Origin: Rebecca billardiae RCC1528
Taxonomy: Eukaryota; Protista; Haptophyta
DNA length: 64,000 bases
Direction: 5' to 3'
Assembly (NCBI GenBank): GCA_965240325.2
Contig: OZ251223.1
Location: forward strand, 2,108,001-2,172,000
The notes under the pieces: generated by a model
Database searches by the model: none
Told to the model about the DNA's origin: nothing
The model's input: the letters and a program-made list of their open reading frames with translations, nothing else
Position numbers and translations under genes: made by a program
Shown here: piece by piece, positions 35,775 to 55,180 of the stretch
Numbering within the stretch: the first letter of the stretch is position 1
Layout of the letters: each line of letters begins with the position of its first letter

Positions 35775-37028
35775 TCACTCGCTCGCCGCGACGCCGCCAT
35801 GGCGCTCGGATTCCGCCTTAAGCTCGGTCAGATACTTGATCGCCGCGTTGCGCGCGCCGTTGTCCTCGGGCCGGTCGAATTCGACCATCGAGTCGGCGAT
35901 GGGCAGCGCGCGGTGCGCGTACGTCGCGGCGATGTCCCACTGCTTCGCCTTCTTGAGCGCGGCGCCGCCGTCCACCAACGCCTTCTTTGCCGCCTGCGCC
36001 GCGCTCGCGCAGCGCTTGTAGCCGAAGTGGTCAGTGCTCGAGCCGTACCGCGAGCGAGGGAGCGACGAGCCGATCTTGCGCACGAGGCGCTCGCACTCCT
36101 TGAGCGTGGGGCCGAGGTCTGCGGTGGGGAGGTGCGCCTCGACCGCGGAGGCGGTGAGCGAGCCCTCGTCCACAAGGCCTGTCACCAGCTCGATCAGCTG
36201 CGCCTTGTCCAGCACGCTGAGCCGCGGCGCGAGCGCCTTGGACACCGCGCTCGGCGGCGGCTTGAGCCGCTTGGCCACTGCAGACGAGCGCGCGTTCTCG
36301 AGCGCCTTGCGGTAGCACGCGAGGCGCACGGCCTTGGTGTGGAGGTCGTAATCGTACACGCACACCTGCAGCGGCCGGTCCGAGTAATCGCGGCGCGTGC
36401 GCTTGCCGGCCATGATCGCCCGCAGCCCGACCAGCAGGTCGGCCACCATGGCGGACTTGGTGCCCGCCTTGAGCCTGTTGAACATATAGCTGCCGCGCGG
36501 GGTGAGCTCGGAGATGACCGTCTTCAGCGCGTCGACGCCGAGCGACTCGAGAATCGGGCGCACATTGGCCTCGGTCAGCTCCGCGGGAAGCCCCTCCTCG
36601 AGCGCGCTCGCCTCTCGCGCGCGCTTCTGCGTGCGGGCGCCGCTCTGCGCCGCAGCAGCCTCTGGCTTCGCGCGCGCGGCGGGCGTAGCCAGCGCCTTGT
36701 CGCCGGGCGGCGCGTACTCGCTGCCATCGTCCCCGTCGTCCTCGCCATCGCCGTCCTCGTTCTCCTCGTCGTCGTCCTCCTCCTCCTCGCCCGCCGGTGC
36801 GGCGGCCACCACCTCCTTGGCCGCGCCCTTCGCGGCGGCGCTCTTCTGGCCCGCTTTGAAGTCACGGATGAGGTCGGTGGAGACGTTGCTCGCGGGCTCC
36901 CAGGTGTTCTGCTCCTCGTCGTACCCCTTCCACTTGATGAGGTACTGCGTACCCTTCGCCGTCCTCCGCGAGTCGAGCACCGCCTCGACCTCATATGTGA
37001 TGTCGTCGTCCCCGCTGTCGTCGGTCAT
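35775..37028 (-). CDS. Chromodomain + acidic linker + Cut8/Sts1-like (nuclear proteasome tether) domain protein
   Basis: Chromodomain YEVEAVLDSR..YLIKWKGYDEEQNTWEPASNV with its aromatic cage intact. The C-terminal LIELV..HLPTADL..SLPRSRYGSSTDHFGYKR..KKALVDGG..QW..Y..FDRPEDN..R resembles the Cut8 family pattern. Confidence 0.78.
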   Translation of the reverse strand: MTDDSGDDDITYEVEAVLDSRRTAKGTQYLIKWKGYDEEQNTWEPASNVSTDLIRDFKAGQKSAAAKGAAKEVVAAAPAGEEEEDDDEENEDGDGEDDGDDGSEYAPPGDKALATPAARAKPEAAAAQSGARTQKRAREASALEEGLPAELTEANVRPILESLGVDALKTVISELTPRGSYMFNRLKAGTKSAMVADLLVGLRAIMAGKRTRRDYSDRPLQVCVYDYDLHTKAVRLACYRKALENARSSAVAKRLKPPPSAVSKALAPRLSVLDKAQLIELVTGLVDEGSLTASAVEAHLPTADLGPTLKECERLVRKIGSSLPRSRYGSSTDHFGYKRCASAAQAAKKALVDGGAALKKAKQWDIAATYAHRALPIADSMVEFDRPEDNGARNAAIKYLTELKAESERHGGVAASE

Positions 37029-37256
37029 GGTTGCGAGTCGTCCGTTGACCCGAGCTCCCGCTCGCCCGCTCGCGAGCCGCCGAGTCCCGCAGGTTGAGTG
37101 CCGGCGAATTTGGCCGGTGGCTGCTTCGCTGGGAGTCCGGGGGGGCCGCTGCCTGACGAACCCGGGCGTCGGTTGCCGGTGCTTGTGTCGCTTTGGCGCC
37201 AATAATCTGAATAATCCTTGCGCACCACCGGGCGCAAACGCTCGCTCAGTGGAACG

Positions 37257-39749
37257 ATGCAGGCCACGCCACGACGGCCGATGACGGGCGCATCACCGGA
37301 GCAAACGCTCGGCCGCGATCTCTCCACGGGGGCGATGACGGGCGAGAGCGCGGCCGTCGTCATCCAACGGCATTACCGCGACGTCCGGGCTCGCCAGAGC
37401 CCCGAGTCGGCGGGCCCCGCCGCGATTGCCCGCATTCTGGCCTTGCACTTGAGCACCGCGCTCACACGCGCGCTGAGTGAGCTGATGCTCTTGCCCTTCT
37501 CGCTGGCCTCGCAGGCCGTCGTGCGCGCCAAGTTCAACCATCTGCTCGACGTCATCGTGCGCGATTACGATCGCAAGCGCGCTCTCAAGGTGGCGTCCAA
37601 CGGCATCCGAATCAGTGGGCGTGACGGTCTGCACCTCGACAACGACGCAGTCGCTGCGCTGCAAGGCGGCGCTACGGCCTACACGGACGTCTGGGTCTCG
37701 CAGGTTGATATCAAGGTGCCTGTGCTGCTGGGCCGCCCGATCGAGATCGAGGTGCGCGCGCTGACATTCTCCTGGACATCTGAGCCGCACGTGCTGAGCA
37801 GCTCCCGCCTCGCAAGCCTTCAGCGGGTCCTCGGCACCGCCGGCCGCGAGAAGAGCTTCGGCCCGAGCGCCGAGGCGGACGCGGGGGCTGCGCCTGCGCA
37901 GGCTGGCGCCGGCGAGGGGCAGCCCGCCATCGGCCCTGGGGAGAGATCTCCGTCATTGCACGCGCGAGCGCGAGAAGCTGCGGAAGGCGGGGTGGCCAAC
38001 GCCGGGTACACTCAGCGACAGCGGGCGTTGGATGGCGTCGTCATCCGCATCGGCCGCATGCGTGTCGACATGCCCGCGCTGACGCTGCCTGGTGACACGA
38101 GCGGATCAAGCCACGTCGCCTCGAGCGGCGCTGCGGGATGGTCTCCGTGGTTCGGAGCTCACGAGAGTGCGCAGGGTGTGGGCTGCGCTCGCTCCGCTGC
38201 TCTCGGGGCTTTGGGCGCAGGCGCTGCCCGGGCGATGATGGCGCCTGTCCAGCGCGGCGACGACGACTCCAGCGCGAGCGTCATCAGCTGTGGTGGGCGC
38301 GTCGCGTGCGCGGTCCGCTGGCCGCGCGCGTGGCGCCGCGACTCGCGCGGTGAACATGCTGCGCAATCTCTCGAGACGATCTCGCCTGCCGCCGTGCCGC
38401 CCGAGCTGCGCATGGCGCCGCCAGCGAGCACGACGCTCACGTTCAGGCACGTGGAGCTCGGCAACGCCACACCTGCGTTCGCACCGAGCGATCGACTGGT
38501 CGTGGTCAAGGCAGCGAAGCGGCCCGCCGCCGAGCCGTCGGCCGCGGAGCGATGGCTGGCTGAAGGGGTGGCAGGCGTCGCGCGGCACACGGACGCGTGG
38601 ATCGGCGGCCTCTCGTCCGGGTGGCGCGACCTGCTGGAGTGGGCGAGGAGCCGCGCTGCTGTCGCGCGCACCGGGCGAGAGGAGATTGCGCGGGACGCAA
38701 CCCCGAGCCCGGCCGCCTCCGAGCACTCCGGGCGGCAACGGCGCGCGCCCACACGCCGCCGCGCAAGCAGCGACAGCGAGGGGGCAGAGGCGCACGTGCA
38801 CGTCTTCAAGCGGCTCACGGCGCGCGCGTGCTCCGCGGATGCGACCATCGCCAACGGCGTGCGCGTTCCGCTGCTCCAGCCGCACGCGTGCGCACTGCAC
38901 GTTCGTCTGACACGAGGCCTGCGCACCGGCCGGCTCGCGGCACTCGACGTGGAAGCGATTGGGCCCGAAGCGCCGCTGGCGCTCCTCGTGGACGCGTCTC
39001 AGGGCACGCGCGGCACGCTCTGCTGGCGGACCGCCGCAGATCCCATCAACGCGCCTGGGAGTGCCCATATCGGCGCGGGACGCAGCTCGATCATCGGCGA
39101 CGCGCTCGCAAGCACGAGCACCGCAGGAAGCGGGGCGGCCGCCGACCGAGCGCGCGACGAGTGGTGGCAGCAGGCCGAGCTGGCTGCTGCGCTCGCAGAT
39201 TCCTTCGACGCCGACGACGCCCGCATCCGCACCGCTCTCGACGCGCGGCCGACAGAGGATGCGCTGCGTGGCTCGCGCGCGCGCTCCGGGGGTAAGCCCT
39301 GGCGCGCGCTCGTGCCTGCTGCGAGCGGGGTCACGGATGCCTACGCCAGTCCCGCGGGCGCGGGCAAGGCCGGCATGCTTGCGCTGAGCCGTGCGCCGTC
39401 CGCTGATTCCATCGAGTCGCCCCCGCCCACCTCCTCCTCTACCTCGTCCGAATCGACGGCGTCCTCCGCGGCCGACTCGCCATCGAGCGCGCCCGAGACC
39501 ATTGGGGAGGTGCTCTGGCGGCATCCCGACGCAGCACGGCGGGTGCATCTGAGCCACGCTGATTTGCGCGCGCTGCTCCAAACGCACGGCGTGCCGCTTG
39601 AAGAGCGCGAGATGCGCGTGCTGGCGGCCCGCCTCGATCCCGCGTGCACAGGCCGTATCGCGTTGCGCGACTTCCTGCGTGCATTCGTGCCCGAAGAGAC
39701 CTGGCGAAGTGAGCACGCGCGAGCCAGAACGTGCGTGCCGCACTCGTGA
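37257..39749 (+). CDS. Short BLTP3/UHRF1BP1-like (chorein-N/RBG) lipid-transfer protein with N-terminal IQ motif and C-terminal EF-hand-like region
   Basis: IQ-like AAVVIQRHYRDVRARQ. Chorein-N-like GLHLDND..VSQVDIKVPVLLGRPIEIEV. BLTP3-like blocks YTQRQRALDGVVIRIG, LTFRHVELGNATPAF, VHVFKRLT, LHVRLTRGLRTGRL. EF-hand-like LAARLDPACTGRIALRDFLRAF. Confidence 0.6.
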   Translation: MQATPRRPMTGASPEQTLGRDLSTGAMTGESAAVVIQRHYRDVRARQSPESAGPAAIARILALHLSTALTRALSELMLLPFSLASQAVVRAKFNHLLDVIVRDYDRKRALKVASNGIRISGRDGLHLDNDAVAALQGGATAYTDVWVSQVDIKVPVLLGRPIEIEVRALTFSWTSEPHVLSSSRLASLQRVLGTAGREKSFGPSAEADAGAAPAQAGAGEGQPAIGPGERSPSLHARAREAAEGGVANAGYTQRQRALDGVVIRIGRMRVDMPALTLPGDTSGSSHVASSGAAGWSPWFGAHESAQGVGCARSAALGALGAGAARAMMAPVQRGDDDSSASVISCGGRVACAVRWPRAWRRDSRGEHAAQSLETISPAAVPPELRMAPPASTTLTFRHVELGNATPAFAPSDRLVVVKAAKRPAAEPSAAERWLAEGVAGVARHTDAWIGGLSSGWRDLLEWARSRAAVARTGREEIARDATPSPAASEHSGRQRRAPTRRRASSDSEGAEAHVHVFKRLTARACSADATIANGVRVPLLQPHACALHVRLTRGLRTGRLAALDVEAIGPEAPLALLVDASQGTRGTLCWRTAADPINAPGSAHIGAGRSSIIGDALASTSTAGSGAAADRARDEWWQQAELAAALADSFDADDARIRTALDARPTEDALRGSRARSGGKPWRALVPAASGVTDAYASPAGAGKAGMLALSRAPSADSIESPPPTSSSTSSESTASSAADSPSSAPETIGEVLWRHPDAARRVHLSHADLRALLQTHGVPLEEREMRVLAARLDPACTGRIALRDFLRAFVPEETWRSEHARARTCVPHS

Positions 39750-39833
39750 TGATGACATGTGAGGCTTGCTTGCCGCCGCCCGGTGCCGGTGGCATCCATG
39801 CTGACCGCACTCGCCGTGAGCGCATGGAGCCAG

Positions 39834-40688
39834 ATGCAGGCCTTGATCGCCGCGTACGCGGATGAGGACTCTGATCACAGTGGCGAGGAGGCGGGCGCCC
39901 CAGCTGAGGCGTTAGAACCTCCCGACCCTAGTCGAGGCGTGAAGCGGCCCCTTGCTTCCGTGCTGCCCGATGCGGAGGAGTTGCTCGCAGACCGGCCGAC
40001 GCCAGACCCTCACCACGGCCGGGTGCGCCAGTTCCCCCACGTGGTCGGTGAGTTCAACTCGCTCGTGTATGTCCCAGCACCGCCGAGTGAGGTGCTTCGG
40101 CGCTGTGTGGAGGAGGTGATCGCGCAGCTTCAGCGTGACGAGCGAGCTTCGCCGATGCACCCTCTCCCTCTCAGCGAGCTGCACATGAGTGTGTCGCAGA
40201 GCTTTACACTGCTGCACTCACAGATACTTCCCTTTACCGATGCCCTGCAAAAGGCGCTGCGTGGCTGCCCGGCCTTCACTCTGCGTACAGCCGGCGTCGC
40301 TGCATTGCACAACGACACGCGGACCTGCCACTTTGCCGCCCTGGTGCTCCAGCCCGTCACTGCGGAGGATGCCAACAGGGCAAGCCGCTTGCTGGCCGCG
40401 GTCAACCACGTGATGGACACCTTCGGCAAGCCGCGCTTCTACGAGCCGCCTATCCTGCACCTTTCGATTGCATGGTCGCTCGAGCCCTTGCTACGCGACC
40501 AGCCGCAAATCAAGCTTGCCGGCGTCGAAACGGCCAGCCAGGGCAGCGCCGTGCCTGTCATCAATGGCGTCGGCGACGTGCGCTGGAACGCCTCTTGTGT
40601 CGAGGCCAAAATGGGCACCACCAAGGTGCATCGCATCGCTCTCGCCAGTTCCGAGGTGCCACTACTCCGCGCTGCTGTCATCGCCTAG
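39834..40688 (+). CDS. USB1: U6 snRNA phosphodiesterase USB1/Mpn1 (2H phosphodiesterase)
   Basis: ALIAAYADEDSD start, HHGRVRQFPHVVGEF..VY, and two HxS motifs (LHMSVSQ; FYEPPILHLSIAW). Confidence 0.93.
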   Translation: MQALIAAYADEDSDHSGEEAGAPAEALEPPDPSRGVKRPLASVLPDAEELLADRPTPDPHHGRVRQFPHVVGEFNSLVYVPAPPSEVLRRCVEEVIAQLQRDERASPMHPLPLSELHMSVSQSFTLLHSQILPFTDALQKALRGCPAFTLRTAGVAALHNDTRTCHFAALVLQPVTAEDANRASRLLAAVNHVMDTFGKPRFYEPPILHLSIAWSLEPLLRDQPQIKLAGVETASQGSAVPVINGVGDVRWNASCVEAKMGTTKVHRIALASSEVPLLRAAVIA

Positions 40689-40918: not shown

Positions 40919-41917
40919 TCATCCCCATGGTCCTCGGCGAGGCCTGGCCGAGAGAGGCGGTGGCGCCGGTGCTGCGCCATACCCCGTACCTCCCCATGGC
41001 GTCGTGATAGGCGGCTCGATGGTGATGTTGTGGTCAAGCGGGTGGCGCGAAGCGTCACCATTCTTCCACGCGTCGAAGCACTGCGCGCACAGGTCGACCG
41101 TGTCGCAAGTCGTGCAGTGGTACCGGTACTCGCCCTGCGCGTTCCACTCATGGCCTCCGCCCCACCCGTCCGTGGGCTGCTGCCCGCGCCGTCGGCGTAC
41201 GCGCACGTCGTTGTCGATTCCGCGGCGGCAGCTGGCGCACGTGTGCGAGGTCAGCCGCTCGTCGCCTGCGCCAGATGCGGACCCCGCTCCGTGGCCGCCC
41301 TGCCCGCTCCCCGGGGCATAGATCCCCTCGAGCCCCTTGAGGGAGCGCTCGAGGCGGCGCACGTGCTCAAGAGCTTCCTGGTTCAGCGCACCCTGCACGG
41401 TGAGGACGTCGCCGCCGTTGGCGGGCGCGAAGCCCGCGGCGAGAAGGACGTCCTCAACGTGTGGGATTTGGAGCAGCCGGGAGATGGTCTGGTTCGAGCG
41501 GCGCACTGTCCGAACAGCAGGGTCATTGGGGCGCGACTCGATATTGCCCAGGAGCTTGAGCAGACAACGGGAGGCAAACATAGCCGACTCGCGCGTCGCA
41601 GAGGCCCCGAGCGAGAAGGCAGCGCGATAAGCAGCGGTCGTCCCCGTGGGCGGAGTCGAGCCGACGATGACGAGCTGCAGCGGGTCAGCAGTCACGTAGT
41701 GCGTGGCCAACAGCTCACCGCTTGGCATTCCCCGCACGTGCCATCGGTGCCCCCAGTAGGTCGCCTGCTGGACCGCAGAACCCTGGGCCACCTCCGCATA
41801 GAACTTCTCCCCCTTCTCGCCGTCCACGAAGAGCAGGTGCGCGGTCGTGTCAACGAAGTGATTGACCGCAAGGTGGACCTCAAGTGTGGCAGCCGTGGGT
41901 GCCACTGCATCAGCCAT
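40919..41917 (-). CDS. VHL-beta-like + PUB + ZZ-type zinc finger protein
   Basis: VHL-like VNH..AHLLFVDGEKGEKFYAEV..G....QATYWGHRWHVR. PUB LLKLLGNIESRPNDPAVRTVRRSN..LLAAGF. ZZ CASC..YRYHCTTCDTVDLCAQCF..H..DH. Confidence 0.75.
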   Translation of the reverse strand: MADAVAPTAATLEVHLAVNHFVDTTAHLLFVDGEKGEKFYAEVAQGSAVQQATYWGHRWHVRGMPSGELLATHYVTADPLQLVIVGSTPPTGTTAAYRAAFSLGASATRESAMFASRCLLKLLGNIESRPNDPAVRTVRRSNQTISRLLQIPHVEDVLLAAGFAPANGGDVLTVQGALNQEALEHVRRLERSLKGLEGIYAPGSGQGGHGAGSASGAGDERLTSHTCASCRRGIDNDVRVRRRRGQQPTDGWGGGHEWNAQGEYRYHCTTCDTVDLCAQCFDAWKNGDASRHPLDHNITIEPPITTPWGGTGYGAAPAPPPLSARPRRGPWG

Positions 41918-42135
41918 CTCTTCGGAGCGCTTGCGTTGACCAAGGCCGTCCGGGCCGGGCTCCCGGGCTGGGGGAGCTTGCCCGGACCTCCCTTGCCGCA
42001 CGCACGCACGCGTTCGTGAGCAACAGCGCGCCGCCGCCGCCGGTGGAAGGCGGGAAACATAGGGCGGGAAGTTGGCCGCGGGACGAGCGACACGCGATGA
42101 CGCCACGCGCCGTGGATGTGCGACTCGTACCAGCG

Positions 42136-43106
42136 ATGGACGCAGACGGACAAGTCTCGCAGAAGGTGGTCGTGCAGGTGCGCGTGCTGGGCGGCGCCGC
42201 CGGATGCGCTGGGGCTCGCCCGGGCCCGCGTGCAGAAGCGCATGCAGACTCGACAGAGTGCGTGTGCGACGCGGCAGCCAGCTGTGACGATGATGAGGTC
42301 GAGAAGCCGGATGCTCCGGAAAGCGAGACCGACTGTGGATCAAGCTCGAGCTCGCCAAGCCTCAACGCGCGCGACTGCGACGAGGTGCTCGGCCAAGTCG
42401 CGCACAGCATGAGCCATCTGCTCGAGGACTTGGAGGCTCTCGGTCGCGAGATGGACGAAGTTGAGCGGGCCGGTGCGGCGCCGCGCGCCGTGCGTGCCGC
42501 AACTGCCACGAAGTTGCTTGGCACACCCGCCTCGCTGACCGCGTCGTCTTGCCCTCGCATGCCATCGCGGAGCAGGCCACGACAATCGCAGCTCGGTCTC
42601 GGAGGATGAGCCCACAGATCCCTGGAATGCCAGTGCAAGCCTCACTTCTATGATGGACGAGATCATCGCGGAGGAGAACGAGAAGGTTCGACAGCAGGAG
42701 CGAGCATGCGCTGATGTGCATGACGGTACGCCGCCCGCGCGTGCGGTCGGAGCGTTTCGATGCGCTCTCAAAGCTAAGGCGCTCACGCCCACCCATGCTC
42801 CACCCTCCTGTTGCTCTGCCACTGCCAGGTCTCCTGCGAGCAGAGCTAAGGAACGCAGAGGAAGGCATCGGGCGGTACACCGAATACTTTGCGTGCCTAA
42901 AAGCAGCGTTGGGGCTCACGGCAAGCACGATGGACTCACCCCATGCCGGTGAAGACGTTGGCGTTCGCGCACCATCGCATCAGTCGGGTGTGCTGGATGC
43001 AAGGTTTACTCCGAGGTTGCAGATCATGGCCTGGCAGGCAGTCGTAATCGCGCTCTCGTTTGTGCTTGGCCGGCTGCTCGTGGCCCAAGCTGCGGCGAGT
43101 ACCTAA
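42136..43106 (+). CDS. Hypothetical tail-anchored coiled-coil protein. Exons 42136-42472, 42576-42725, 42829-43106
   Basis: Two GT-AG introns with CTGAC/CTCAC branch-like sites join three frames. Helical acidic segments and a C-terminal TM (IMAWQAVVIALSFVLGRLLVA). The start is uncertain. Confidence 0.5.
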
Positions 43107-45819: not shown

Positions 45820-46071
45820 TTACCCAGCGCGCTCCTGGGCGAACGCCTCGGCCGCTTCCGCGGCCACGGTGAGCTTCGCCGGCTCGGCCGGCGCCTGGCC
45901 CTGCGCCGAGGCGGCCTTCCCGCCGCCGCGCCCACCGATGGTCTCCACCGCGGACAGCATCCACTCGTTGGCCTTGAGGGCGCCCGAGAGGGGAGACGCC
46001 TCCGGCACCTGCGGACGCGGCGCAACGTGGGGGGCGCAGCGCGGCGGGCTGGACCGTGTCACGGCGCGCGC

Positions 46072-46108
<37 letters not shown>

Positions 46109-49100
46109 GCGCAGGGGTCCACCGGGCGAGAGGCGCGCGGGGACAGCGCACCTGCGCTACGCATGCCACCTTGCCGTCGCTCGCAGCGAGCGCGAGGCAG
46201 GGCAGCGCAGGCACCGCCTTGGCCACCTGCTTGAGCACCGACTGTACGCCCTTCCCGTCCAGGCCCTCGCCGAGGCTGAGGACGGCGAAGGGCTGGCCGG
46301 CGCCGACGGCTGCCTCCGCGTCGCTCACGGCGGCGGCGGCGACAGCGTTGGCGCGCGCGGCGGCCTCGGCCTTGGCCGCGGCGACGGCCGCCTTCTCGAG
46401 CTTGGCGCACTCCGCGCGCACCGCCGCCTTCACCGCGACGGGCGCGCCCGATCCGTCCACGCGCGTGCGCAGCGCGACCACGTCCTCTTTGCCCACGCCC
46501 TTCCGCCCCTTCAGCTGCGCGAGCTCGGCCTCGAGCTCCCGACCCTCGGCGATCGCGGCGGCGGCGGCGTCGCGCGTCACGCCGACCACGCGCCGCACGC
46601 CCTTTGCGATGCCCGTCTCCTCGACGATGGCAAACGCGCGAGCGTCAGACGTGCGCTGAACGTGCGTGCCGCCGCAGAACTCGATCGAGCTGCCGGCCCA
46701 CGCCTCGTCGGTCGGCGAGGCGAGCAGCTCGTCCACGGGCACGCCGACCGAGACGACGCGCACGGGGTCGGGATACGCCTCGCCGAAGACGGCGCGGAGC
46801 GCGCTCACCGCCGTCGCGTCGCCGAGCGGCGCGAGCTGCGCGTACACGGGCGCGTCCTGCTCGATCACTGCGCGCACGGTGCCCTCAACCGCCTCCAGCT
46901 CCGCGCCGCTCATCGGCGCGTTGTGCGAGAAGTCGAAGCGCAGCTTGGACTCGTCGACGAGCGAGCCGCGCTGGTCGACGCCATCGCCGAGCACCTTGCG
47001 CAGCGCAAAGTTGAGCACGTGCGTCATCGAGTGGTTGGGCGCAATCGCGCGCCGCCGCGCCGCGTCGACGGCCGCGACCGCGGCCGCGCCCAGCTGGAGC
47101 TCCCCGCGGGAGACGCGCCCGACGTGCACCACGTACCCGGCGTACACCTGCGTGTCCTGCACGTCGAACGCCCACGCGCCCGCGCCGGCGCCGTCGGCGG
47201 AGAGCACGCCCGAGTCGCCCACCTGCCCGCCCGCCTCGGCGTAGAAGCTCGTGCGGTCGAGGATGAGCCCGACCGTGCCGCTGGCCGCGCTCACCGCCTC
47301 GCCAGCCGGCACGAAGCGCGAGCCGTCGTACACGGCGGCGACGGCCGCGCCGCGCAGCGGGAGCGGCGCGCCGTCCTCCGCGCGCGCGTACTTGGGCTCG
47401 TCGTCCGTGGGCGACACGCCCGCCGCGCTCAGCGCCGCCGTCTGCTCCGCCTGCAGCTCGAGCGAGCGGCCGTCGGCGCCGCTCGCCTTTGCCGAGCGCG
47501 CCGCCGCCGAGCGCTCGCGCTGCGCGGCCATCTCCTGCTCAAAGCCCGCGCCGTCGACGCGCAGCCCCTTCTCGCGCGCCATCAGCTCGGTGAGGTCGAG
47601 GGGGAACCCCATCGTGTCGTACAGGTAGAAGGCCGTCGCGCCGTCGATCGTGCCCGCGCCGCTCGACGCGAGCGCGTCGGCGCGCTTCTCGAACTCGCGG
47701 ATGCCGCGCGTGAGCATCGACGAGAAGGACGACTCCTCGTCAGCCAGCACCTCCGCGATCTGGGGGAGGCGGGCGTGGAGCTCGGGGAACTGCGCGCCGT
47801 ACTCGGCGGCGACGACGGGCGCGAGCCGCGCGAAGAAGCCGTCGGGCGCGTCGAGCTTCTGCTTGCCGTACCGCACGGCGCGCCGCAGGATGCGCCGGAG
47901 CACGTACCCGCGGCCCTCGTTGGACGGCATCGCGCCGTCTGCGATCGCAAAGCTGAGTGTGCGGATGTGGTCGGCGATCACGCGGTACGCCGTGTCGCGC
48001 ATGCCCGCGTCCTCCGCGCCGAGCTTGCCGGCGTACGGCGGCGCGCCGGTCTCGGCCCGGATCGCCTCGAACAGCGGCGTGAAGACGTCCGTGTCGTAGT
48101 TCGACTGCCGGTCCTGCAGCACGGACACGAGCCGCTCGAAGCCCATCCCCGTGTCCACATGGCACGCGGGCAGTCGCTTGAGCTCGCCCGAGACCTCGCG
48201 GTTGAACTGGATGAAGACGAGGTTCCAGACCTCGAGCACGAGCGGGTCGTCCTGGTTCACCAGGGCCGAGGCGTCGCGCCCGCCCACGCGGTCGTAGTGC
48301 AGCTCGGAGCACGGCCCGCACGGGCCCGTGTCGCCCATCTCCCAAAAGTTGTCCTGCGGCGCGGCGCGGCGCGGCGGCAGCCGGAGCGCCGCGCCGAGCG
48401 CAGCCGGCCGCGCGTGAGCCGCGTGCGGCGCGTGTCCACGGCGCGCGCGGCTCGCAGCCGTGCCGCGCCCGGCCGCTGGCGCCGGCGCGCACACGCGCCG
48501 GCGCCTCGCGCGCGCGCCCAGCCGCGCGCGGCGCGCTGAGCGTGCGGGTGCGCGCGCGGCGCACCTTTGCATTCCCCGGGAGCACGTGGCCCTCGGGCAG
48601 CAGCCGCAGCCACATGTCGCGCGCCTCGTGGTCGGGCTCGAGCCCCTGCGCCTCGTCGCCCTCGAAGTAGGTGGCGTACAGCCGCTCCTTCTCCAGCCCG
48701 TACTCGCGCGTCAGCAGCTCGAACGCCCACTCGATCGCCTCCGCCTTGAAGTAGTCGCCAAAGCTCCACGTGCCGAGCATCTCAAAGAACGTGTGGTGGT
48801 ACGTGTCGAAGCCGACGTCCTCGAGGTCGTTGTGCTTGCCGCCGGCGCGGATGCACTTCTGCGAGTTCACCGCGCGCTTCAGCTTGGCGAGCGGGCTGCT
48901 CGGGTCCACCTGCCCCAGGAAGATCGGCTTGAACTGGTTCATGCCCGCGTTCGCAAAGAGGAGGGTCGGGTCATCGAGCGGCACGACCGGCGACGACTTG
49001 TAGTTGGTGTGGTCGTACTTGGACTGGAAGAAGTCGATGAATTTGCTCCGCACGTTCACCGCCGTCCATTGCTGCTGCGCCCCCGTCAGCTCCGCCGCGC

Positions 49101-49317
49101 TGGGCTTGGGCACGGCTGATGCGGAGACGCGTGCGCCGCGACGGGATGCGACGCGCGAGCCGCCCGCGGCAGGCAGGCGCTCGGCGCCGAGCGCGCGCGC
49201 GGCCGAAAGGCTCGCGCGAGGCACGTGCCAGACGCCACGCGGCGCGGCAAGCGGCCCACTCGCTAGGCCGAGGGGACACTGCAGCGCGAGCAGCGCCGCG
49301 GAGGCGAAGCGCTTCAT
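45820..49317 (-). CDS. alaS: Alanyl-tRNA synthetase (eukaryotic type) with signal + transit-like presequence. Exons 49317-48565, 48353-46152, 46008-45820
   Basis: [71 protein letters not shown], editing-site NHSMTH and EFCGGTH, C-terminal [10 protein letters not shown]. Two GT-AG introns restore the frame. Confidence 0.96.
46072..46107 (+). repeat. (GCA)12 microsatellite inside the last AlaRS intron
   Basis: Directly visible. Confidence 0.95.
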
Positions 49318-49451
49318 CAAGGCGCAGTGCCGATTCGCGCAGCTTCCGCCGCCGGCGGCCGTCTCTCGCCCTGGCTCGCTGGGTGCTGGCCTGCTGGGGC
49401 GATGGGCGTGCCGCGCAGCACAGCACGTAGCCACGATGGCGGTCTCGGGCT

Positions 49452-49511
49452 TGCTGCACTGATCCACCCTGATTGTGGTGTGGTGGGTGCTGCACTGATC
49501 CACCCTGATTG
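49452..49511 (+). promoter_or_regulatory. Perfect 24-nt direct repeat TGCTGCACTGATCCACCCTGATTG in the AlaRS/BUD23 bidirectional promoter
   Basis: Copies at 49452-49475 and 49488-49511. The regulatory role is inferred from position only. Confidence 0.55.
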
Positions 49512-50797: not shown

Positions 50798-53700
50798 TCA
50801 GTTCTTGCGCCGCTTGCTGCCCAGGCTGAGACTGAGCCGACGCTTGGGAGCGCGACGGGGCGCACCGGCACCGTCATCTGCTGGCGCCTGGTGATGTGGA
50901 GCAGTCTCAGCAGCCGCTGCTGCGTGCCGTTCGGTGACGGCATCGGGAGCCTGGTTGGCGTGCGCGTGCCCAGTCGCCGCGCGTGGCGCGGCAGCGGCAC
51001 TGACCCGCACCGGAGCCGGTTGGCACGAGCCTGGCCGGCGTTTGGGCCGGCGCGCGTCGCCTGGCAGAGCCGACGGTCTCTCGCGCGGCGCTCTCACAAA
51101 GTCGCCGTCGCTGTCGCTGTCGCTCCTGACCCCGCGGGCCGACGCCGCCTCGGCCGTTGGCTGCTCGGCATCGTGCGCCTCCGCCCGCGCGTCACGTACG
51201 CCGCCACCAGTCGTCGCTGCGTCGTCGGCGTGATTTGCCGCCGATGGCGGGCGCGCTGCGCCGAGGGCGCCGCTGGCCGTCCTCGGCTCAGCTGGCGGCG
51301 CGATGGCATCCGCATCGAGATCGTCGTCGATGCTCACGCGGCACACGCAGCAGTCCACGCCCGCAGCCAGCAGCAGGTCGAACCAGCCGCGCTGCTGGTC
51401 GGACAGCCGGTCGTTGGCCGACTTGACCTCGACGAGTCGCGCCGCGCCAAACACGCCGCCGCCGCGCGCGGCCACGGCCGTGCCGCCGCCGCTTGCACAC
51501 GCAGCCGGTGCTGCAGCGGCCGGGGCGCACAGGGGAGCGTCGGCGCGCGCGAGCATGGGAGAGGCGTCGCCGCCGGGCGGTGCGGCGGCAGGCGCGGCCA
51601 TGCCGGGCGAGGCGGTGCTCGGCGGCAGCAGCAACGCCCGCACAGCGGCGCCGCCCGTGCCGCCTGCGCTCCCAGAGAGCGGTGTCACGCCGGCCGCCCC
51701 GCTCGCGCCGGCGGCGCGACTCGCGTTCTGGGCGTCGATCGGAGGCTCGAGGCGTCGCCAGAGGACGAGGTCGGGCATGCCCCGCGCCCACCCGCCGTAG
51801 TCCTCCGCCAGCACGCGCAGGATGGCGCCGAGCGCCGCCCCGCCCAAGCAGCCGGCTATCTCTGCCAACGGCTCGGCCGACGGCCAGCGCGCCCAGCTGA
51901 TGCCGCGGCACAGCTCGCCCGCGTGCTCGGCGTGGGCCGCGCGCACCTCGGCCGCGAGCCGCGCGCCCGCCATCGCGCGCAGCTCGCGCAGCCGCGCGTC
52001 GAGCGCGCCGCGCCGCGCCGCGTAGAAGGCGCCGCCGCCGCTCGCCAGGTCGAGCGGCGCCGAGAGGCAGCGCGTGGGCAGCACGTCCGGAACGGCCGAG
52101 TCGAAGATGGTCCGCCACAGCAGCAGCGCAAAGAGCGCGGTGAAGACGCCCGTCTCGGCGTGCACGCCCTGCCAGCCCGCCTGCGCGCGGTGCTCCTGTA
52201 GCACGAGCTCCTCGACGGAGCACGGCACGCCGTCGCCCTCCAGGCCCATGAAGGCGAGCTTGCCGCCGCGCGCGCGCGGCTTGGCGCCGGCTGCGGGCGG
52301 CAGCGGCCGCGCGCGCAGCCGGATGACCGGGGGCTCCGCGGGCAGCGGCGGGAGCGGCGCGCTCGCGCCGCCGCGCGCGGGCGAGGCGCGCGCGAGCGCG
52401 CGGGCGAGCGCGTCGAGCGCCGGCGTCTCCGCCCGGCCGAGCCCCGCCGAGGAGGCGGGCACCGCCGCGTCGGCGCGCGCTCGCGCCGCGGCCGAGGCGC
52501 GCGGCGCCGAGACGAGCCGCTCTCGCGCGGCGGCGAGCCTGTGCGCGCGGCGCAGCAGGCCGACGCGGTCGCCGGTGGCCACGGCCGGGTCTGCGAGCGC
52601 GGCGCGTGCGAGGGCGTCGCACGCGCGCGCGTCGACCCTCCCGGCGCGCGCGCCGTCGATCATCAGCCGCGTCCACCAGTGCCCGCGGCGCGCGGGGCCG
52701 AAGGGCGAGAGCAAGCACAGCGCCGCCGCCTCGGCCGCCTCCGCGGCTCGGCCCAGCCGGCTGAGGAGAGAGCTGTGCACGGTGAGCAGCGCACACGCGG
52801 CGCAGCCGGGGGCGAGCGAGGCGGCGAGGGGGCGGCGCGCGCGCACCGACGCCCAGCCCTCCGCCTCGTCCGCGCCGACGGCGGCCGCCTCCTCCGAGGC
52901 GTGCGGCGGCGCGCACAGCTCGCGCGCCGCGGCTGCCAGCGCGCGCCTCAGCCAGCCGCCGTCCGCGCTGGCGCCGCAGCCCTCCGCCTCCGCCTCCTCC
53001 GCCTCCTCCGCCTCCTCCGCCTCCTCCTCTGCGGGGGCGGCGGCGGTGCTGCCGCCACTGGGCCACTGCGCCAGCGGCGCGGCGCGCAGGGCGCAGGCAT
53101 CCGGCGTCGGCGGCGCGCGCGCGGCTGCGCGCAGCGCCAGCGCGCGCAGCCCCTCGCTCGCGCGCGCGGCGAGCAGCTCGCACTCGGCGACGCGTCCCGC
53201 CTCCAGCGCGCCCTCGTACTGCCGGGCGAGCGCGCATGCGGCTTCGTGCCGATCCAGCGCCGCTCGGGAGGCGAAGGGCGGAGCGGGCCGAGGCGGCGTG
53301 TGCGCGCTGGGCTCATGCGCTGCCGCGCGCGCCTCCTCCCCCGCCACCGCGCCCGCGACCGCCGGCGCCGCGGCCGGCGCGGCCGGCGCGGCCTCCGCGG
53401 CCGGCGGCGCGCACGCCGCGGCCGGCGCGCCCGCGCCGTCGCCGCGCGCGACGCTCGGCCAGGGTGTGTAGCTGGGGAAGCGCACCGCGCCCATCTCAGC
53501 GGCGGCGGCGAGGGAGAGACCGTCGCCCGCGGAGGCGTGCGGCGATGCGCAGAGCACGAGCCGCTCCGCGCGGGCGAGCGCGTCGAGCGCCTCGTCCCGG
53601 AGCAGCAGCACCGGGCCGGAGAGCGCGCCAATCCGCCGAAGCAGCGGCCGTGGCCGAGAGAGGCGGCCGACCACGCCGCCCGCGGCCGCGCGACGCGCCG

Positions 53701-54631
53701 ACTGGGGCGCGCCGAGCGAGGCGGCGTGCTCCGGAGCCGCGTCGGGCGCGCCCACGCCCAGCCGCACGAGCAGAGCGGCCTCCAGCACCGCGCGCTGCCC
53801 ACCGCCCCGGCCAACGCCCGACGCGCCCGCCTCGGCGCGCTTCCTCGCGCTCGGGGCGGCGTCCGGCGCGCCTCGGCGCGCCGGCTGCACGCCCGCGGCC
53901 GCGGCAATCTGCGCGAGCTCGGCGGCGGAGAGGGTGCCGAGCTGCAGCGCGAGCGCGAGCGCGTCGCTGCACGGCGCGTCGTCGCACACCAGCTTGACGA
54001 AGCCCGCGCCCTCCAGCTCGGCCGCCGCCCCGTCCGTGTCCTGCGCCTCGCCCACCTCGCGGTACCGGCCGCGCAGGGCGGCCAGGCGGAACGCAGTCGG
54101 CCGGCGCGCAAACAGCCGGGCGTAGAGCGCGCGCGCGCGGAGCGAGAGCGCGAGGAAGCGGCGGATCCACGCGTGCTCGCCCTCGCTGAGGAGCTCCACG
54201 TCGCGCGCGAGTGCCGCGTGCAGCAGCTCCTCGAGCTGCTGCGTGTGCGCGCCGCCGTGCGCTGCCCACCACGGCAGTGCATCCTCGCCCTCTGCGCCCT
54301 CGTCGGCGTCGTCGCCGCTGGTGCGCGCGCCAGCGTCGCCCGCGGGCGAAGGGGGCGGAGTGACAGCCACGGCGGCCGCGGGGGGCGCCGCCCGATCCGC
54401 TGCGCTCGCCGGCGCGGCCCGAGCGCCGAGCGCCGGCGGCAGGAAGGCGAGCAGCGACGTCTGCCGGAGGGGGCCGTGTGCAGCGGGCTGCGCGGGGCGC
54501 GCGGGAGAGGCGAGCCAAGACTCCGGGCGGGCGGCGCCGTCGCGGTGGCCCTCGCGATGGCGCACCCGCGCTGCGAAGCCGCCAAGCCAGCTGCGGCCCA
54601 CGAGAGTCTGCGCGTTGGTGAGCGCGACCAT
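50798..54631 (-). CDS. FAN1: Fanconi-associated nuclease 1 (VRR-NUC domain)
   Basis: LYARLFARR, RRGHWWTRL, CSVEELVL..GWQGVHAE..LFALLLW..IF, APLDL, LAEDY..GMPDLVLW, RLVEVKSANDRLSDQQRGW. The start ATG is uncertain. Confidence 0.9.
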   Translation of the reverse strand: MVALTNAQTLVGRSWLGGFAARVRHREGHRDGAARPESWLASPARPAQPAAHGPLRQTSLLAFLPPALGARAAPASAADRAAPPAAAVAVTPPPSPAGDAGARTSGDDADEGAEGEDALPWWAAHGGAHTQQLEELLHAALARDVELLSEGEHAWIRRFLALSLRARALYARLFARRPTAFRLAALRGRYREVGEAQDTDGAAAELEGAGFVKLVCDDAPCSDALALALQLGTLSAAELAQIAAAAGVQPARRGAPDAAPSARKRAEAGASGVGRGGGQRAVLEAALLVRLGVGAPDAAPEHAASLGAPQSARRAAAGGVVGRLSRPRPLLRRIGALSGPVLLLRDEALDALARAERLVLCASPHASAGDGLSLAAAAEMGAVRFPSYTPWPSVARGDGAGAPAAACAPPAAEAAPAAPAAAPAVAGAVAGEEARAAAHEPSAHTPPRPAPPFASRAALDRHEAACALARQYEGALEAGRVAECELLAARASEGLRALALRAAARAPPTPDACALRAAPLAQWPSGGSTAAAPAEEEAEEAEEAEEAEAEGCGASADGGWLRRALAAAARELCAPPHASEEAAAVGADEAEGWASVRARRPLAASLAPGCAACALLTVHSSLLSRLGRAAEAAEAAALCLLSPFGPARRGHWWTRLMIDGARAGRVDARACDALARAALADPAVATGDRVGLLRRAHRLAAARERLVSAPRASAAARARADAAVPASSAGLGRAETPALDALARALARASPARGGASAPLPPLPAEPPVIRLRARPLPPAAGAKPRARGGKLAFMGLEGDGVPCSVEELVLQEHRAQAGWQGVHAETGVFTALFALLLWRTIFDSAVPDVLPTRCLSAPLDLASGGGAFYAARRGALDARLRELRAMAGARLAAEVRAAHAEHAGELCRGISWARWPSAEPLAEIAGCLGGAALGAILRVLAEDYGGWARGMPDLVLWRRLEPPIDAQNASRAAGASGAAGVTPLSGSAGGTGGAAVRALLLPPSTASPGMAAPAAAPPGGDASPMLARADAPLCAPAAAAPAACASGGGTAVAARGGGVFGAARLVEVKSANDRLSDQQRGWFDLLLAAGVDCCVCRVSIDDDLDADAIAPPAEPRTASGALGAARPPSAANHADDAATTGGGVRDARAEAHDAEQPTAEAASARGVRSDSDSDGDFVRAPRERPSALPGDARRPKRRPGSCQPAPVRVSAAAAPRAATGHAHANQAPDAVTERHAAAAAETAPHHQAPADDGAGAPRRAPKRRLSLSLGSKRRKN

Positions 54632-55180
54632 GTCGTTGGCCGGTTGGGACGTCAGTCGCGCTCGCTCGCGCACTCGCGCTGGCCGCTGCGCCGCTGCCGC
54701 CCCCGGACCCGGACTGGCCTTACTACGGACTGGCCCTGGGCGTCGCGTAGGTAGCCTTCTAAGGCGCCCGCTTGCTGAGGTCGTCACAGGCTACTATGTG
54801 ACACTATGACATGCATAGGAAGCGTTATGACACATCAGGAACAGACACTCTGCCATTACAAGTAGCAGACCCAAATCCTTCCCGACGGAGTACTGTAGTC
54901 GCGGATGCGTCACGCGTGCCCCGCGACGGCGACCCGAGCGTGCGCCCTCAGTGCGACCCAGCCGACCCGCCTGAAGGCGCGCCGGCCCGCGCCGGGGGCG
55001 CCGCTGCTTCCGGTCGGAGGGCTGCTCCCCAGTCGGACCCCAACGTCGACTGCACCACCGGTGTCATGCCTGCTACGAGCGAGAACCGAGGACGCTTCCG
55101 CGCTCGAAGCTCGCCACGCAGCGCGTGCTCCCGCTGTGCGGGCAGCGTGGAGATAGTACTGGTAGCAGCCATCAATGCGC

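What the first reader, a model, noticed from the sequence alone, without database searches (positions are those of the whole stretch)
35775..37028. Chromodomain fused to a Cut8/Sts1 proteasome-tether domain
Seen: an HP1/Polycomb-like chromodomain with Y/W/Y cage, an acidic linker, a SAP-like helical segment, then a Cut8-like C-terminus in place of a chromoshadow domain. Known: Cut8/Sts1 localises 26S proteasomes in the nucleus, and chromodomains read methyl-lysine. Inference: a direct adaptor recruiting proteasomes to methylated chromatin. I know of no described fusion of this kind.
Basis: partly seen in the sequence, partly recalled or inferred. Interest (0 to 1): 0.75.

Follow-up and report, generated by a model that had tools for sequence, protein, structure and literature searches.

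The report
Chromatin-reader head on a proteasome-tether protein
One intron-free gene of a GC-rich alga joins an HP1-type reader of methylated histones to the Cut8/Sts1 domain that yeasts use to position proteasomes in the nucleus. Unnamed marine microbes carry the same join, sometimes with a different chromatin reader, so it may dock protein degradation onto marked chromatin, though that function is untested.

Summary
Window 35775-37028 (minus strand) is one uninterrupted 417-codon ORF with GC3 of 92%.

**Domains**
- Residues 12-58 match Pfam Chromo (E 6e-17). The aromatic cage is Y12/W33/Y36, and the model fits HP1/CBX1 at 1.1-1.4 Å.
- Residues 265-402 match Pfam Cut8 (E 5e-15). A family profile hits only S. 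pombe Cut8 in the PDB (E 4e-21). The AlphaFold model superposes on 3Q5W (Z 12.5, 2.3 Å over 112 residues).
- Between them lie an acidic disordered linker, a conserved KRAR-type basic patch and a conserved ~100-residue helical domain.
- The "SAP-like" label for that helical domain is only weakly supported (Z ≤ 6.3).

**Relatives**
- An exhaustive search found the Chromo+Cut8 architecture in seven further 50%-identity clusters, all unnamed metagenomic proteins. One sits in a separate Cut8 clade (AU p 0.01).
- Other Cut8 relatives carry a PHD finger (Pyramimonas obovata), a Tudor domain or an AT-hook-like motif instead.

**Reading**
- Cut8 has repeatedly acquired chromatin-binding heads. This supports, but does not prove, a chromatin-docked proteasome adaptor.
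- Histone binding, proteasome binding and transcription are all untested.
- No paper found describes the fusion.
- Verdict: a new variant of a known kind.

The parts
35775..37028 (-). Complete intron-free CDS (417 codons plus TGA) of the chromodomain-Cut8 protein (P0001)
   Evidence: Single ORF. GC3 is 92% in this frame. The identical protein is called on an independent Logan contig.
36828..37001 (-). HP1-type chromodomain, residues ~10-67, with cage Y12/W33/Y36. It is preceded by an acidic D/S-rich N-terminal tail (residues 1-9, 37002-37028).
   Evidence: Pfam Chromo E 6.2e-17. phmmer to CBX1/CBX5 gives E ~6e-11. Foldseek and VIA give HP1/CBX1/Rhino/CDY matches at rmsd 1.1-1.8 A and Z 7.7-8.8. 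The cage columns are conserved in the family alignment A1.
36645..36827 (-). Disordered hinge, residues 68-128, with an acidic run (residues ~80-103, E/D-rich)
   Evidence: pLDDT below 50 over ~70-123. Composition. Equivalent acidic linkers occur in the orthologues.
36591..36644 (-). Helix with a conserved basic patch (K135-R136-A137-R138); candidate nuclear localisation signal
   Evidence: Helix 130-144 in the model. KR-rich patch conserved in alignment A1. The NLS role is inferred from the N-terminal NLS of Sts1 (PMC10808114).
36258..36581 (-). Conserved middle helical domain (residues ~150-257: four helices, a beta hairpin and a long helix); fold affinity unresolved
   Evidence: Conserved in relatives with chromo, PHD and other heads. 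The AF2 model of this domain alone has pLDDT 82.5. Only weak matches to CARD and SAP-type bundles, Z <= 6.3. No usable matches in the Atlas search or by PDB sequence profile.
36132..36248 (-). Three short helices (residues 261-299) at the position of the Cut8/Sts1 three-helix dimerisation domain
   Evidence: Helices 261-272, 275-288 and 293-299. They lie inside the Pfam Cut8 match. The Foldseek alignment to 3Q5X spans 157 columns, but the rigid-body fit covers only the bundle.
35793..36119 (-). Cut8/Sts1 helical-bundle core (residues 304-412), including the family signature loop L323-C340 (36009-36062)
   Evidence: VIA-align gives 3q5w_A Z 12.5, rmsd 2.3 A over 112 aa, model 304-417 against Cut8 73-192. 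Family profile against the PDB gives Cut8 only, E 4.1e-21. P301, P324, D333 and R339 are nearly invariant across 119 sequences.

Best explanation
The gene encodes a Cut8/Sts1-family adaptor whose usual disordered N-terminus has been extended with an HP1-type methyl-lysine-reading chromodomain. Proposed mechanism: the basic KRAR patch takes the protein into the nucleus. The chromodomain cage (Y12/W33/Y36) docks it on methylated histone tails, most likely H3K9me or H3K27me. The C-terminal three-helix plus helical-bundle Cut8 module dimerises and binds 26S proteasomes, as the equivalent bundle of yeast Sts1 does. Proteasomes would then be concentrated on marked chromatin rather than, or as well as, at the nuclear envelope. 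Shown here: the domain identities by sequence and by fold, an intact cage, one ORF, conservation of the fusion, and repeated replacement of the head by other chromatin-binding modules. Inferred: which mark is read, proteasome binding, dimerisation, nuclear import, and any effect on chromatin-protein turnover.
For: Both domains score far above the Pfam thresholds. The family profile hits only S. pombe Cut8 in the PDB, E 4e-21. The model's bundle superposes on 3Q5W at Z 12.5, 2.3 A over 112 aa, and its chromodomain on H3K9me3-bound HP1/CBX1/Rhino/CDY structures at 1.1-1.8 A. Chromo+Cut8 recurs in P0012, P0014, P0017, P0018, P0024, P0030 and P0048, plus P0181, each as a single ORF in independent metagenomes. 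The cage columns are conserved across them. P0048 lies in a different Cut8 clade, and forcing it into the main clade is rejected (AU p 0.01; tree), so the fusion arose at least twice or is ancient. The same scaffold carries a PHD finger in Pyramimonas obovata (P0021). Other Cut8 relatives carry a PTM/DIR17-type Tudor domain (P0106) or an RGRP AT-hook-like motif (P0002/P0003). The Sts1 six-helix bundle alone binds 26S proteasomes, and Sts1 carries an N-terminal NLS (PMC10808114).
Against: No experiment or transcript supports it, and no RNA run was listed. Identity to S. pombe Cut8 in the structural alignment is only 18%. Proteasome binding has been shown only for fungal members and, according to reviews, a fly member. 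The match covers Pfam profile positions 52-189 of 241, so it excludes the profile's N-terminal ~50 positions. In fission yeast the N-terminal region is where Cut8 has been proposed to bind proteasomes through ubiquitinated lysines (my recollection of Takeda & Yanagida 2005; I could not read the paper). I could not check whether the genome has a second, head-less Cut8, or which histone methyl marks it makes.
Confidence: 0.45

Rival explanations
1. Heterochromatin-to-nuclear-envelope anchor. The chromodomain holds methylated chromatin while the Cut8 module binds the inner nuclear membrane or pore basket. This would resemble C. elegans CEC-4, with proteasome binding secondary or absent.
For: S. 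pombe Cut8 is described as a nuclear-envelope protein with a membrane-binding domain (PMC5674884; PMC5748218). CEC-4 is a chromodomain protein that anchors H3K9me chromatin at the periphery (review PMC4783997). The domain identities are the same as for the main explanation.
Against: Nothing in the sequence shows membrane binding. No transmembrane segment or lipid motif was identified. PHD and AT-hook heads in relatives do not point specifically to heterochromatin. This rival is not exclusive of the main explanation.
Confidence: 0.22
2. An HP1 substitute. The Cut8 module serves only as a dimerisation and partner-docking platform in place of a chromoshadow domain. The protein would bridge nucleosomes and compact chromatin without any link to the proteasome.
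For: The layout mirrors HP1: acidic tail, chromodomain, hinge with a basic patch, then a C-terminal dimerising domain. Cut8 and Sts1 are reported or predicted to form homodimers through the three-helix domain.
Against: The most conserved part of the whole family is the bundle's signature loop (P324, D333, R339), not the putative dimer helices. That suggests a conserved ligand shared with the fungal proteins. Dimerisation was not tested here.
Confidence: 0.15
3. Sts1-like import adaptor only. The protein ferries proteasomes through the pore by way of its NLS, and the chromodomain merely retains the short-lived adaptor in the nucleus or times its release, for example after mitosis.
For: Sts1 and AKIRIN2 work as NLS-bearing, short-lived import adaptors. 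The basic patch is conserved.
Against: An import-only role does not explain why several different chromatin-binding heads were acquired repeatedly.
Confidence: 0.1
4. Annotation or assembly artefact, or a recent accident: two neighbouring genes read through, or a transposon-derived chromodomain landed next to Cut8.
For: The genome is reported to hold many chromodomain-bearing transposases (earlier notes). Long antisense ORFs are common in this GC-rich DNA.
Against: There is one ORF with uniform GC3. An identical protein is called on an independent contig. Orthologous fusions at 28-38% overall identity occur in many metagenomes. The chromodomain is closest to HP1/CBX and carries an HP1-like acidic tail.
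Confidence: 0.03

Closest known systems
S. pombe Cut8 / S. cerevisiae Sts1 (Pfam PF08559; PDB 3Q5W, 3Q5X)
   Same: The C-terminal three-helix plus helical-bundle core matches: profile E 4e-21 and Z 12.5 at 2.3 A. The signature loop is shared. A basic NLS-like patch lies upstream in a disordered region.
   Different: The algal protein has a folded chromodomain and an extra ~100-aa helical domain upstream. It does not match the first ~50 and last ~50 positions of the Pfam profile. Only 18% identity in the structural alignment. No functional data.
HP1 / CBX1/3/5 and CDY-type chromodomain proteins
   Same: Chromodomain at 40-49% identity with an intact three-residue aromatic cage, an acidic N-terminal tail and a hinge.
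   Different: No chromoshadow domain. The C-terminal half is Cut8-like, so it is not an HP1 family member.
Pyramimonas obovata PHD-type domain-containing protein (UniRef100_A0A7S0RBS8; P0021)
   Same: Same scaffold: reader head, acidic linker, basic patch, the conserved middle domain, then Cut8. It falls in the same Cut8 clade.
   Different: The head is a PHD finger, not a chromodomain. 39% identity over the shared part.
AKIRIN2 (vertebrate proteasome import adaptor)
   Same: A possible functional analogue: a small NLS-bearing dimeric adaptor that binds proteasomes and sets their nuclear level (review PMC8961600).
   Different: Unrelated in sequence and fold, and it has no histone reader.
C. 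elegans CEC-4
   Same: A chromodomain joined to a non-HP1 localisation module. It links methylated chromatin to a nuclear landmark (PMC4783997).
   Different: CEC-4 has no Cut8 domain and no known proteasome link.

Membership tests
Cut8/Sts1 (PF08559) | Sequence match to the family profile above the curated threshold | tested here: met
   56.3 bits against a cut-off of 26.2, E 4.8e-15. A profile of 119 relatives hits only Cut8 3Q5W in the PDB, E 4.1e-21.
Cut8/Sts1 (PF08559) | Helical-bundle (14-3-3-like / six-helix) core fold | tested here: met
   AF2 model (pLDDT >90 over residues 300-410) against 3q5w_A: Z 12.5, rmsd 2.3 A, 112 aa, the top match. Foldseek's top hit is 3q5x, E 2e-4.
Cut8/Sts1 (PF08559) | Three-helix dimerisation domain before the bundle; homodimer | tested here: inconclusive
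   Three helices at 261-299 are predicted at the right place. They were not superposed rigidly on Cut8, and no multimer prediction was run.
Cut8/Sts1 (PF08559) | NLS in a disordered N-terminal region | tested here: inconclusive
   The conserved KRAR / KR-rich patch at 135-138 follows the disordered linker. This is a motif only.
Cut8/Sts1 (PF08559) | Binds 26S proteasomes; short-lived proteasome substrate | not testable with these tools
   Known for Sts1 and Cut8 (PMC10808114; PMC8961600). It needs pull-down and half-life assays.
Chromodomain methyl-lysine readers (PF00385) | Profile match and chromo fold | tested here: met
   E 6.2e-17. Rmsd 1.1-1.4 A to HP1/CBX1 bound to H3K9me peptides.
Chromodomain methyl-lysine readers (PF00385) | Three-residue aromatic cage | tested here: met
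   Y12, W33 and Y36 align with the HP1beta cage. The columns hold Y/F, W and Y/F in all 12 fusion proteins.
Chromodomain methyl-lysine readers (PF00385) | Binding to a methylated histone peptide | not testable with these tools
   Needs peptide array or ITC.
HP1 family | C-terminal chromoshadow domain | tested here: not met
   No PF01393 hit at E <= 1. The C-terminal half is Cut8.
SAP domain | SAP helix-extended-helix motif in the middle segment | tested here: inconclusive
   No Pfam SAP hit. Structural matches: PIAS1 SAP Z 5.7 (2.2 A over 65 aa), FAN1 SAP region Z 5.5, rice SIZ1 SAP Z 4.5. These tie with CARD domains at Z 5-6.3, and all fall below the tool's Z 8 guide.

The most novel reading that the evidence does not exclude
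Cut8 proteins with interchangeable chromatin-reader heads (chromo, PHD, Tudor, AT-hook) form a previously unrecognised class of adaptors in algae and other protists. They would station 26S proteasomes directly on specific chromatin states. They evolved more than once, and they would give a genetically simple, natural system for chromatin-targeted protein degradation.
Probability: 0.35. Interest if true: 0.8.

Novelty: new variant of a known kind. Interest (0 to 1): 0.64.

Why it matters
How proteasomes reach chromatin is an open question (review PMC8961600). The known localisers, Cut8/Sts1 and AKIRIN2, act at the nuclear envelope or in import. A single polypeptide that joins a histone-mark reader to the Cut8 core would be a direct physical link that can be tested with a handful of standard assays. 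Its recurrence with four kinds of chromatin-binding head argues that the link is selected for. It also shows that Cut8 homologues exist in algal lineages, whereas a cryo-ET study found no obvious homologue in Chlamydomonas (PMC5748218).

Tried and rejected
- **RNA evidence.** The look-up of sequencing runs listed no run, so read laying was not used and transcription is unverified.
- **Protein Atlas and ESM structure atlas.** No usable hit for the whole protein or for the middle domain.
- **Single-sequence PDB search.** It found only chromodomains. Cut8 appeared only with a family profile.
- **Word-index protein searches.** They missed most of the fusion relatives that the exhaustive search found, so their blanks mean little.
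- **SAP assignment of the middle domain.** Not established. A weak sequence hit to a de novo designed protein (7vty, E 0.003) and CARD-like structural matches are equally uninformative.
- **Apparently head-less close relatives.** P0011 and P0013 are truncated gene calls on short contigs and say nothing about loss of the chromodomain.
- **L014.** An annotated 85-aa relative in NCBI GCA_026770615.1 is a fragment of an intron-rich gene. tblastn found no chromodomain in the 4 kb upstream, which is not informative.
- **Host identification.** The Cut8 part is nearest to prasinophyte green algae. The neighbouring AlaRS is nearest to ochrophyte algae among named hits. The host is unresolved.
- **Gene-fusion artefact.** Rejected.

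Full report
**1. What is there**

The minus strand of window 35775-37028 carries one uninterrupted ORF of 417 codons, from ATG at 37028 to TGA at 35775-35777.

GC by codon position is 68%, 49% and 92%. This pattern is typical of real coding sequence in GC-rich algae. The long antisense ORF at 35799-37097 shows the mirror-image pattern, so it is a by-product of composition.

The ORF stays open upstream to a TTG at 37202. The ATG at 37028 fits better as the start. It yields an acidic N-terminal tail (MTDDSGDDD...), and the orthologues begin the same way (MSSDSE..., MSSESESEEE...).

An 843-aa ORF starts about 190 bp upstream on the other strand, so the two genes are divergent neighbours. An identical protein is called on an independent 7-kb Logan contig with the same neighbours.

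**2. Domains**

Pfam finds two domains far above threshold:
- Chromo at residues 12-58, E 6.2e-17.
- Cut8 (PF08559) at residues 265-402, E 4.8e-15, covering profile positions 52-189 of 241.

*Chromodomain.* Against PDB sequences it is closest to HP1-class proteins: CBX1 and CBX5 at E ~6e-11, CDYL at ~1e-9, and Drosophila HP1 at 1e-9. Polycomb-class chromodomains score much lower. In that alignment Y12, W33 and Y36 fall on the three cage residues of HP1beta.

*Full-length model.* An AlphaFold2 model built on 119 relatives has mean pLDDT 82. It shows:
- a chromodomain at 12-67;
- a disordered acidic hinge at about 70-125;
- a helix at 130-144 carrying K135-R136-A137-R138;
- a folded helical domain at 153-255;
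- three short helices at 261-299;
- a helical bundle at 306-410.

*Structure comparison.* Foldseek's best PDB hits are the two Cut8 crystal structures (3Q5X, E 2e-4). They are followed by many H3K9me3- or H3K27me3-bound chromodomains at rmsd 1.1-1.8 Å. VIA-align gives 3q5w_A as the top match: Z 12.5, rmsd 2.3 Å over 112 residues, model 304-417 on Cut8 73-192. A sequence profile of the family hits exactly one PDB sequence, Cut8, at E 4e-21. Both assignments therefore rest on sequence and on fold.

*Middle domain.* Residues about 150-257 are real and conserved. Folded alone, the domain gives pLDDT 82.5. Its affinities are unresolved:
- An exhaustive structural comparison gives nothing above Z 6.3.
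- CARD/death-fold bundles (Z 5-6.3, rmsd 3.6-4.2 Å) tie with SAP-type bundles: PIAS1 1v66 at Z 5.7 (2.2 Å over 65 aa), the FAN1 SAP region at Z 5.5, and rice SIZ1 at Z 4.5.
- Pfam SAP does not match.

"SAP-like" is therefore possible but not shown.

**3. Relatives**

An exhaustive phmmer search of 1.84 billion representatives with residues 140-417 gave 148 hits at E ≤ 1e-3. I tested these for a chromodomain and scanned them with Pfam.

- Seven further 50%-identity clusters have the same Chromo+Cut8 architecture: P0012, P0014, P0017, P0018, P0024, P0030 and P0048.
- P0181 adds one more protein.
- All come from metagenomes or unnamed assemblies, as single ORFs on gene-dense contigs. P0018 occurs in several ocean samples and P0163 in NCBI GCA_035092305.1.
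- Across the 12 aligned fusion proteins the cage columns are Y/F, W and Y/F. W33, G35 and the TWEP motif are invariant.

The head is also interchangeable:
- P0021 from Pyramimonas obovata has a PHD finger on the same scaffold: acidic linker, basic patch, the conserved middle domain, then Cut8.
- P0106 has a PTM/DIR17-type Tudor domain.
- P0002 and P0003 begin with a KRGRGRPPGSKNKK motif, which looks like an AT-hook.

A maximum-likelihood tree of 112 Cut8 cores gives the following placements:
- The window's protein falls in a 22-member clade (SH-aLRT 93). That clade holds the two named prasinophyte sequences, the AT-hook forms and five of the six other chromo forms in the tree.
- P0048 lies in another clade (SH-aLRT 97).
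- Forcing P0048 into the main clade costs 70 log-likelihood units and is rejected (AU p 0.01). One caveat applies: the group was defined after the tree had been seen.

So the chromodomain fusion arose at least twice, or it is old and was lost often.

Two apparently head-less close relatives, P0011 and P0013, are truncated gene calls and carry no information.

**4. Mechanism**

What is known of the family:
- Sts1 has an N-terminal NLS, a three-helix putative dimerisation domain, and a six-helix bundle that is sufficient to bind 26S proteasomes (PMC10808114).
- Cut8 is needed to hold proteasomes at the fission-yeast nuclear envelope. It is described as having a membrane-binding domain, and it affects centromere protein levels (PMC5674884).

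On that basis my best reading is a dimeric adaptor. It enters the nucleus by way of the basic patch, docks on methylated histone tails through the chromodomain, and holds proteasomes through the Cut8 core. The repeated acquisition of different chromatin-binding heads is the strongest argument that the coupling is functional.

Every biochemical step is inferred. I put this reading at about 0.45.

The main rival is a CEC-4-like anchor that ties methylated chromatin to the nuclear envelope (0.22; PMC4783997). It is compatible with the main reading. The other rivals are an HP1 substitute that uses Cut8 only to dimerise (0.15), an import-only adaptor (0.1) and an artefact (0.03).

**5. Comparison and novelty**

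By sequence and fold it is a member of the Cut8/Sts1 family and of the chromodomain readers. It is not an HP1, because no chromoshadow domain is present.

I found no paper that describes a chromodomain-Cut8 or any reader-Cut8 fusion. A cryo-ET study states that Cut8/Sts1 has no obvious homologue in Chlamydomonas (PMC5748218). I class the protein as a new variant of a known kind. The parts are familiar; the combination and its recurrence are not documented.

**6. Limits**

- The host organism is unidentified. The Cut8 core is nearest to prasinophyte sequences. The neighbouring alanyl-tRNA synthetase is nearest, among named hits, to ochrophyte algae such as Heterosigma, Tribonema and Chattonella.
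- No RNA run was listed.
- The rest of the genome could not be searched for a second Cut8, for HP1 or for histone methyltransferases.

Noticed in passing
P0021 (Pyramimonas obovata, UniRef100_A0A7S0RBS8); P0106; P0002/P0003 (loci L002-L005): Cut8 relatives with other chromatin-binding heads. P0021 has a PHD finger on the same linker / middle-domain / Cut8 scaffold. P0106 has a PTM/DIR17-type Tudor domain plus Cut8. P0002 and P0003 have an AT-hook-like KRGRGRPPGSKNKK motif plus Cut8 in compact ocean picoeukaryote contigs.
   Followed up: partly
window 46059-49503 (-): An alanyl-tRNA synthetase is split over two overlapping ORFs (46059-48572 and 47740-49503), so there is an intron or a frameshift. 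Its best named relatives are ochrophyte algae at 54-61% identity.
   Followed up: partly
window 50798-54787 (-): A 1329-aa ORF with FAN1 HTH, FAN1 TPR and VRR-NUC domains: a FAN1-type repair nuclease.
   Followed up: no
window 37218-39749 (+): The divergent neighbour of the chromo-Cut8 gene is an 843-aa ORF with no Pfam match. The same gene (822 aa) sits beside the fusion gene on the independent Logan contig L001.
   Followed up: no
window 39759-40688 (+) and 40919-42358 (-): A USB1/HVSL-family protein, and a PUB+ZZ domain protein.
   Followed up: no
L014 (NCBI GCA_026770615.1, MU631795.1): An annotated 85-aa 'Cut8' product is a fragment of an intron-rich gene. At least four exons match residues 285-410 of the window's protein, at up to 81% identity in the signature loop.
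   Followed up: partly
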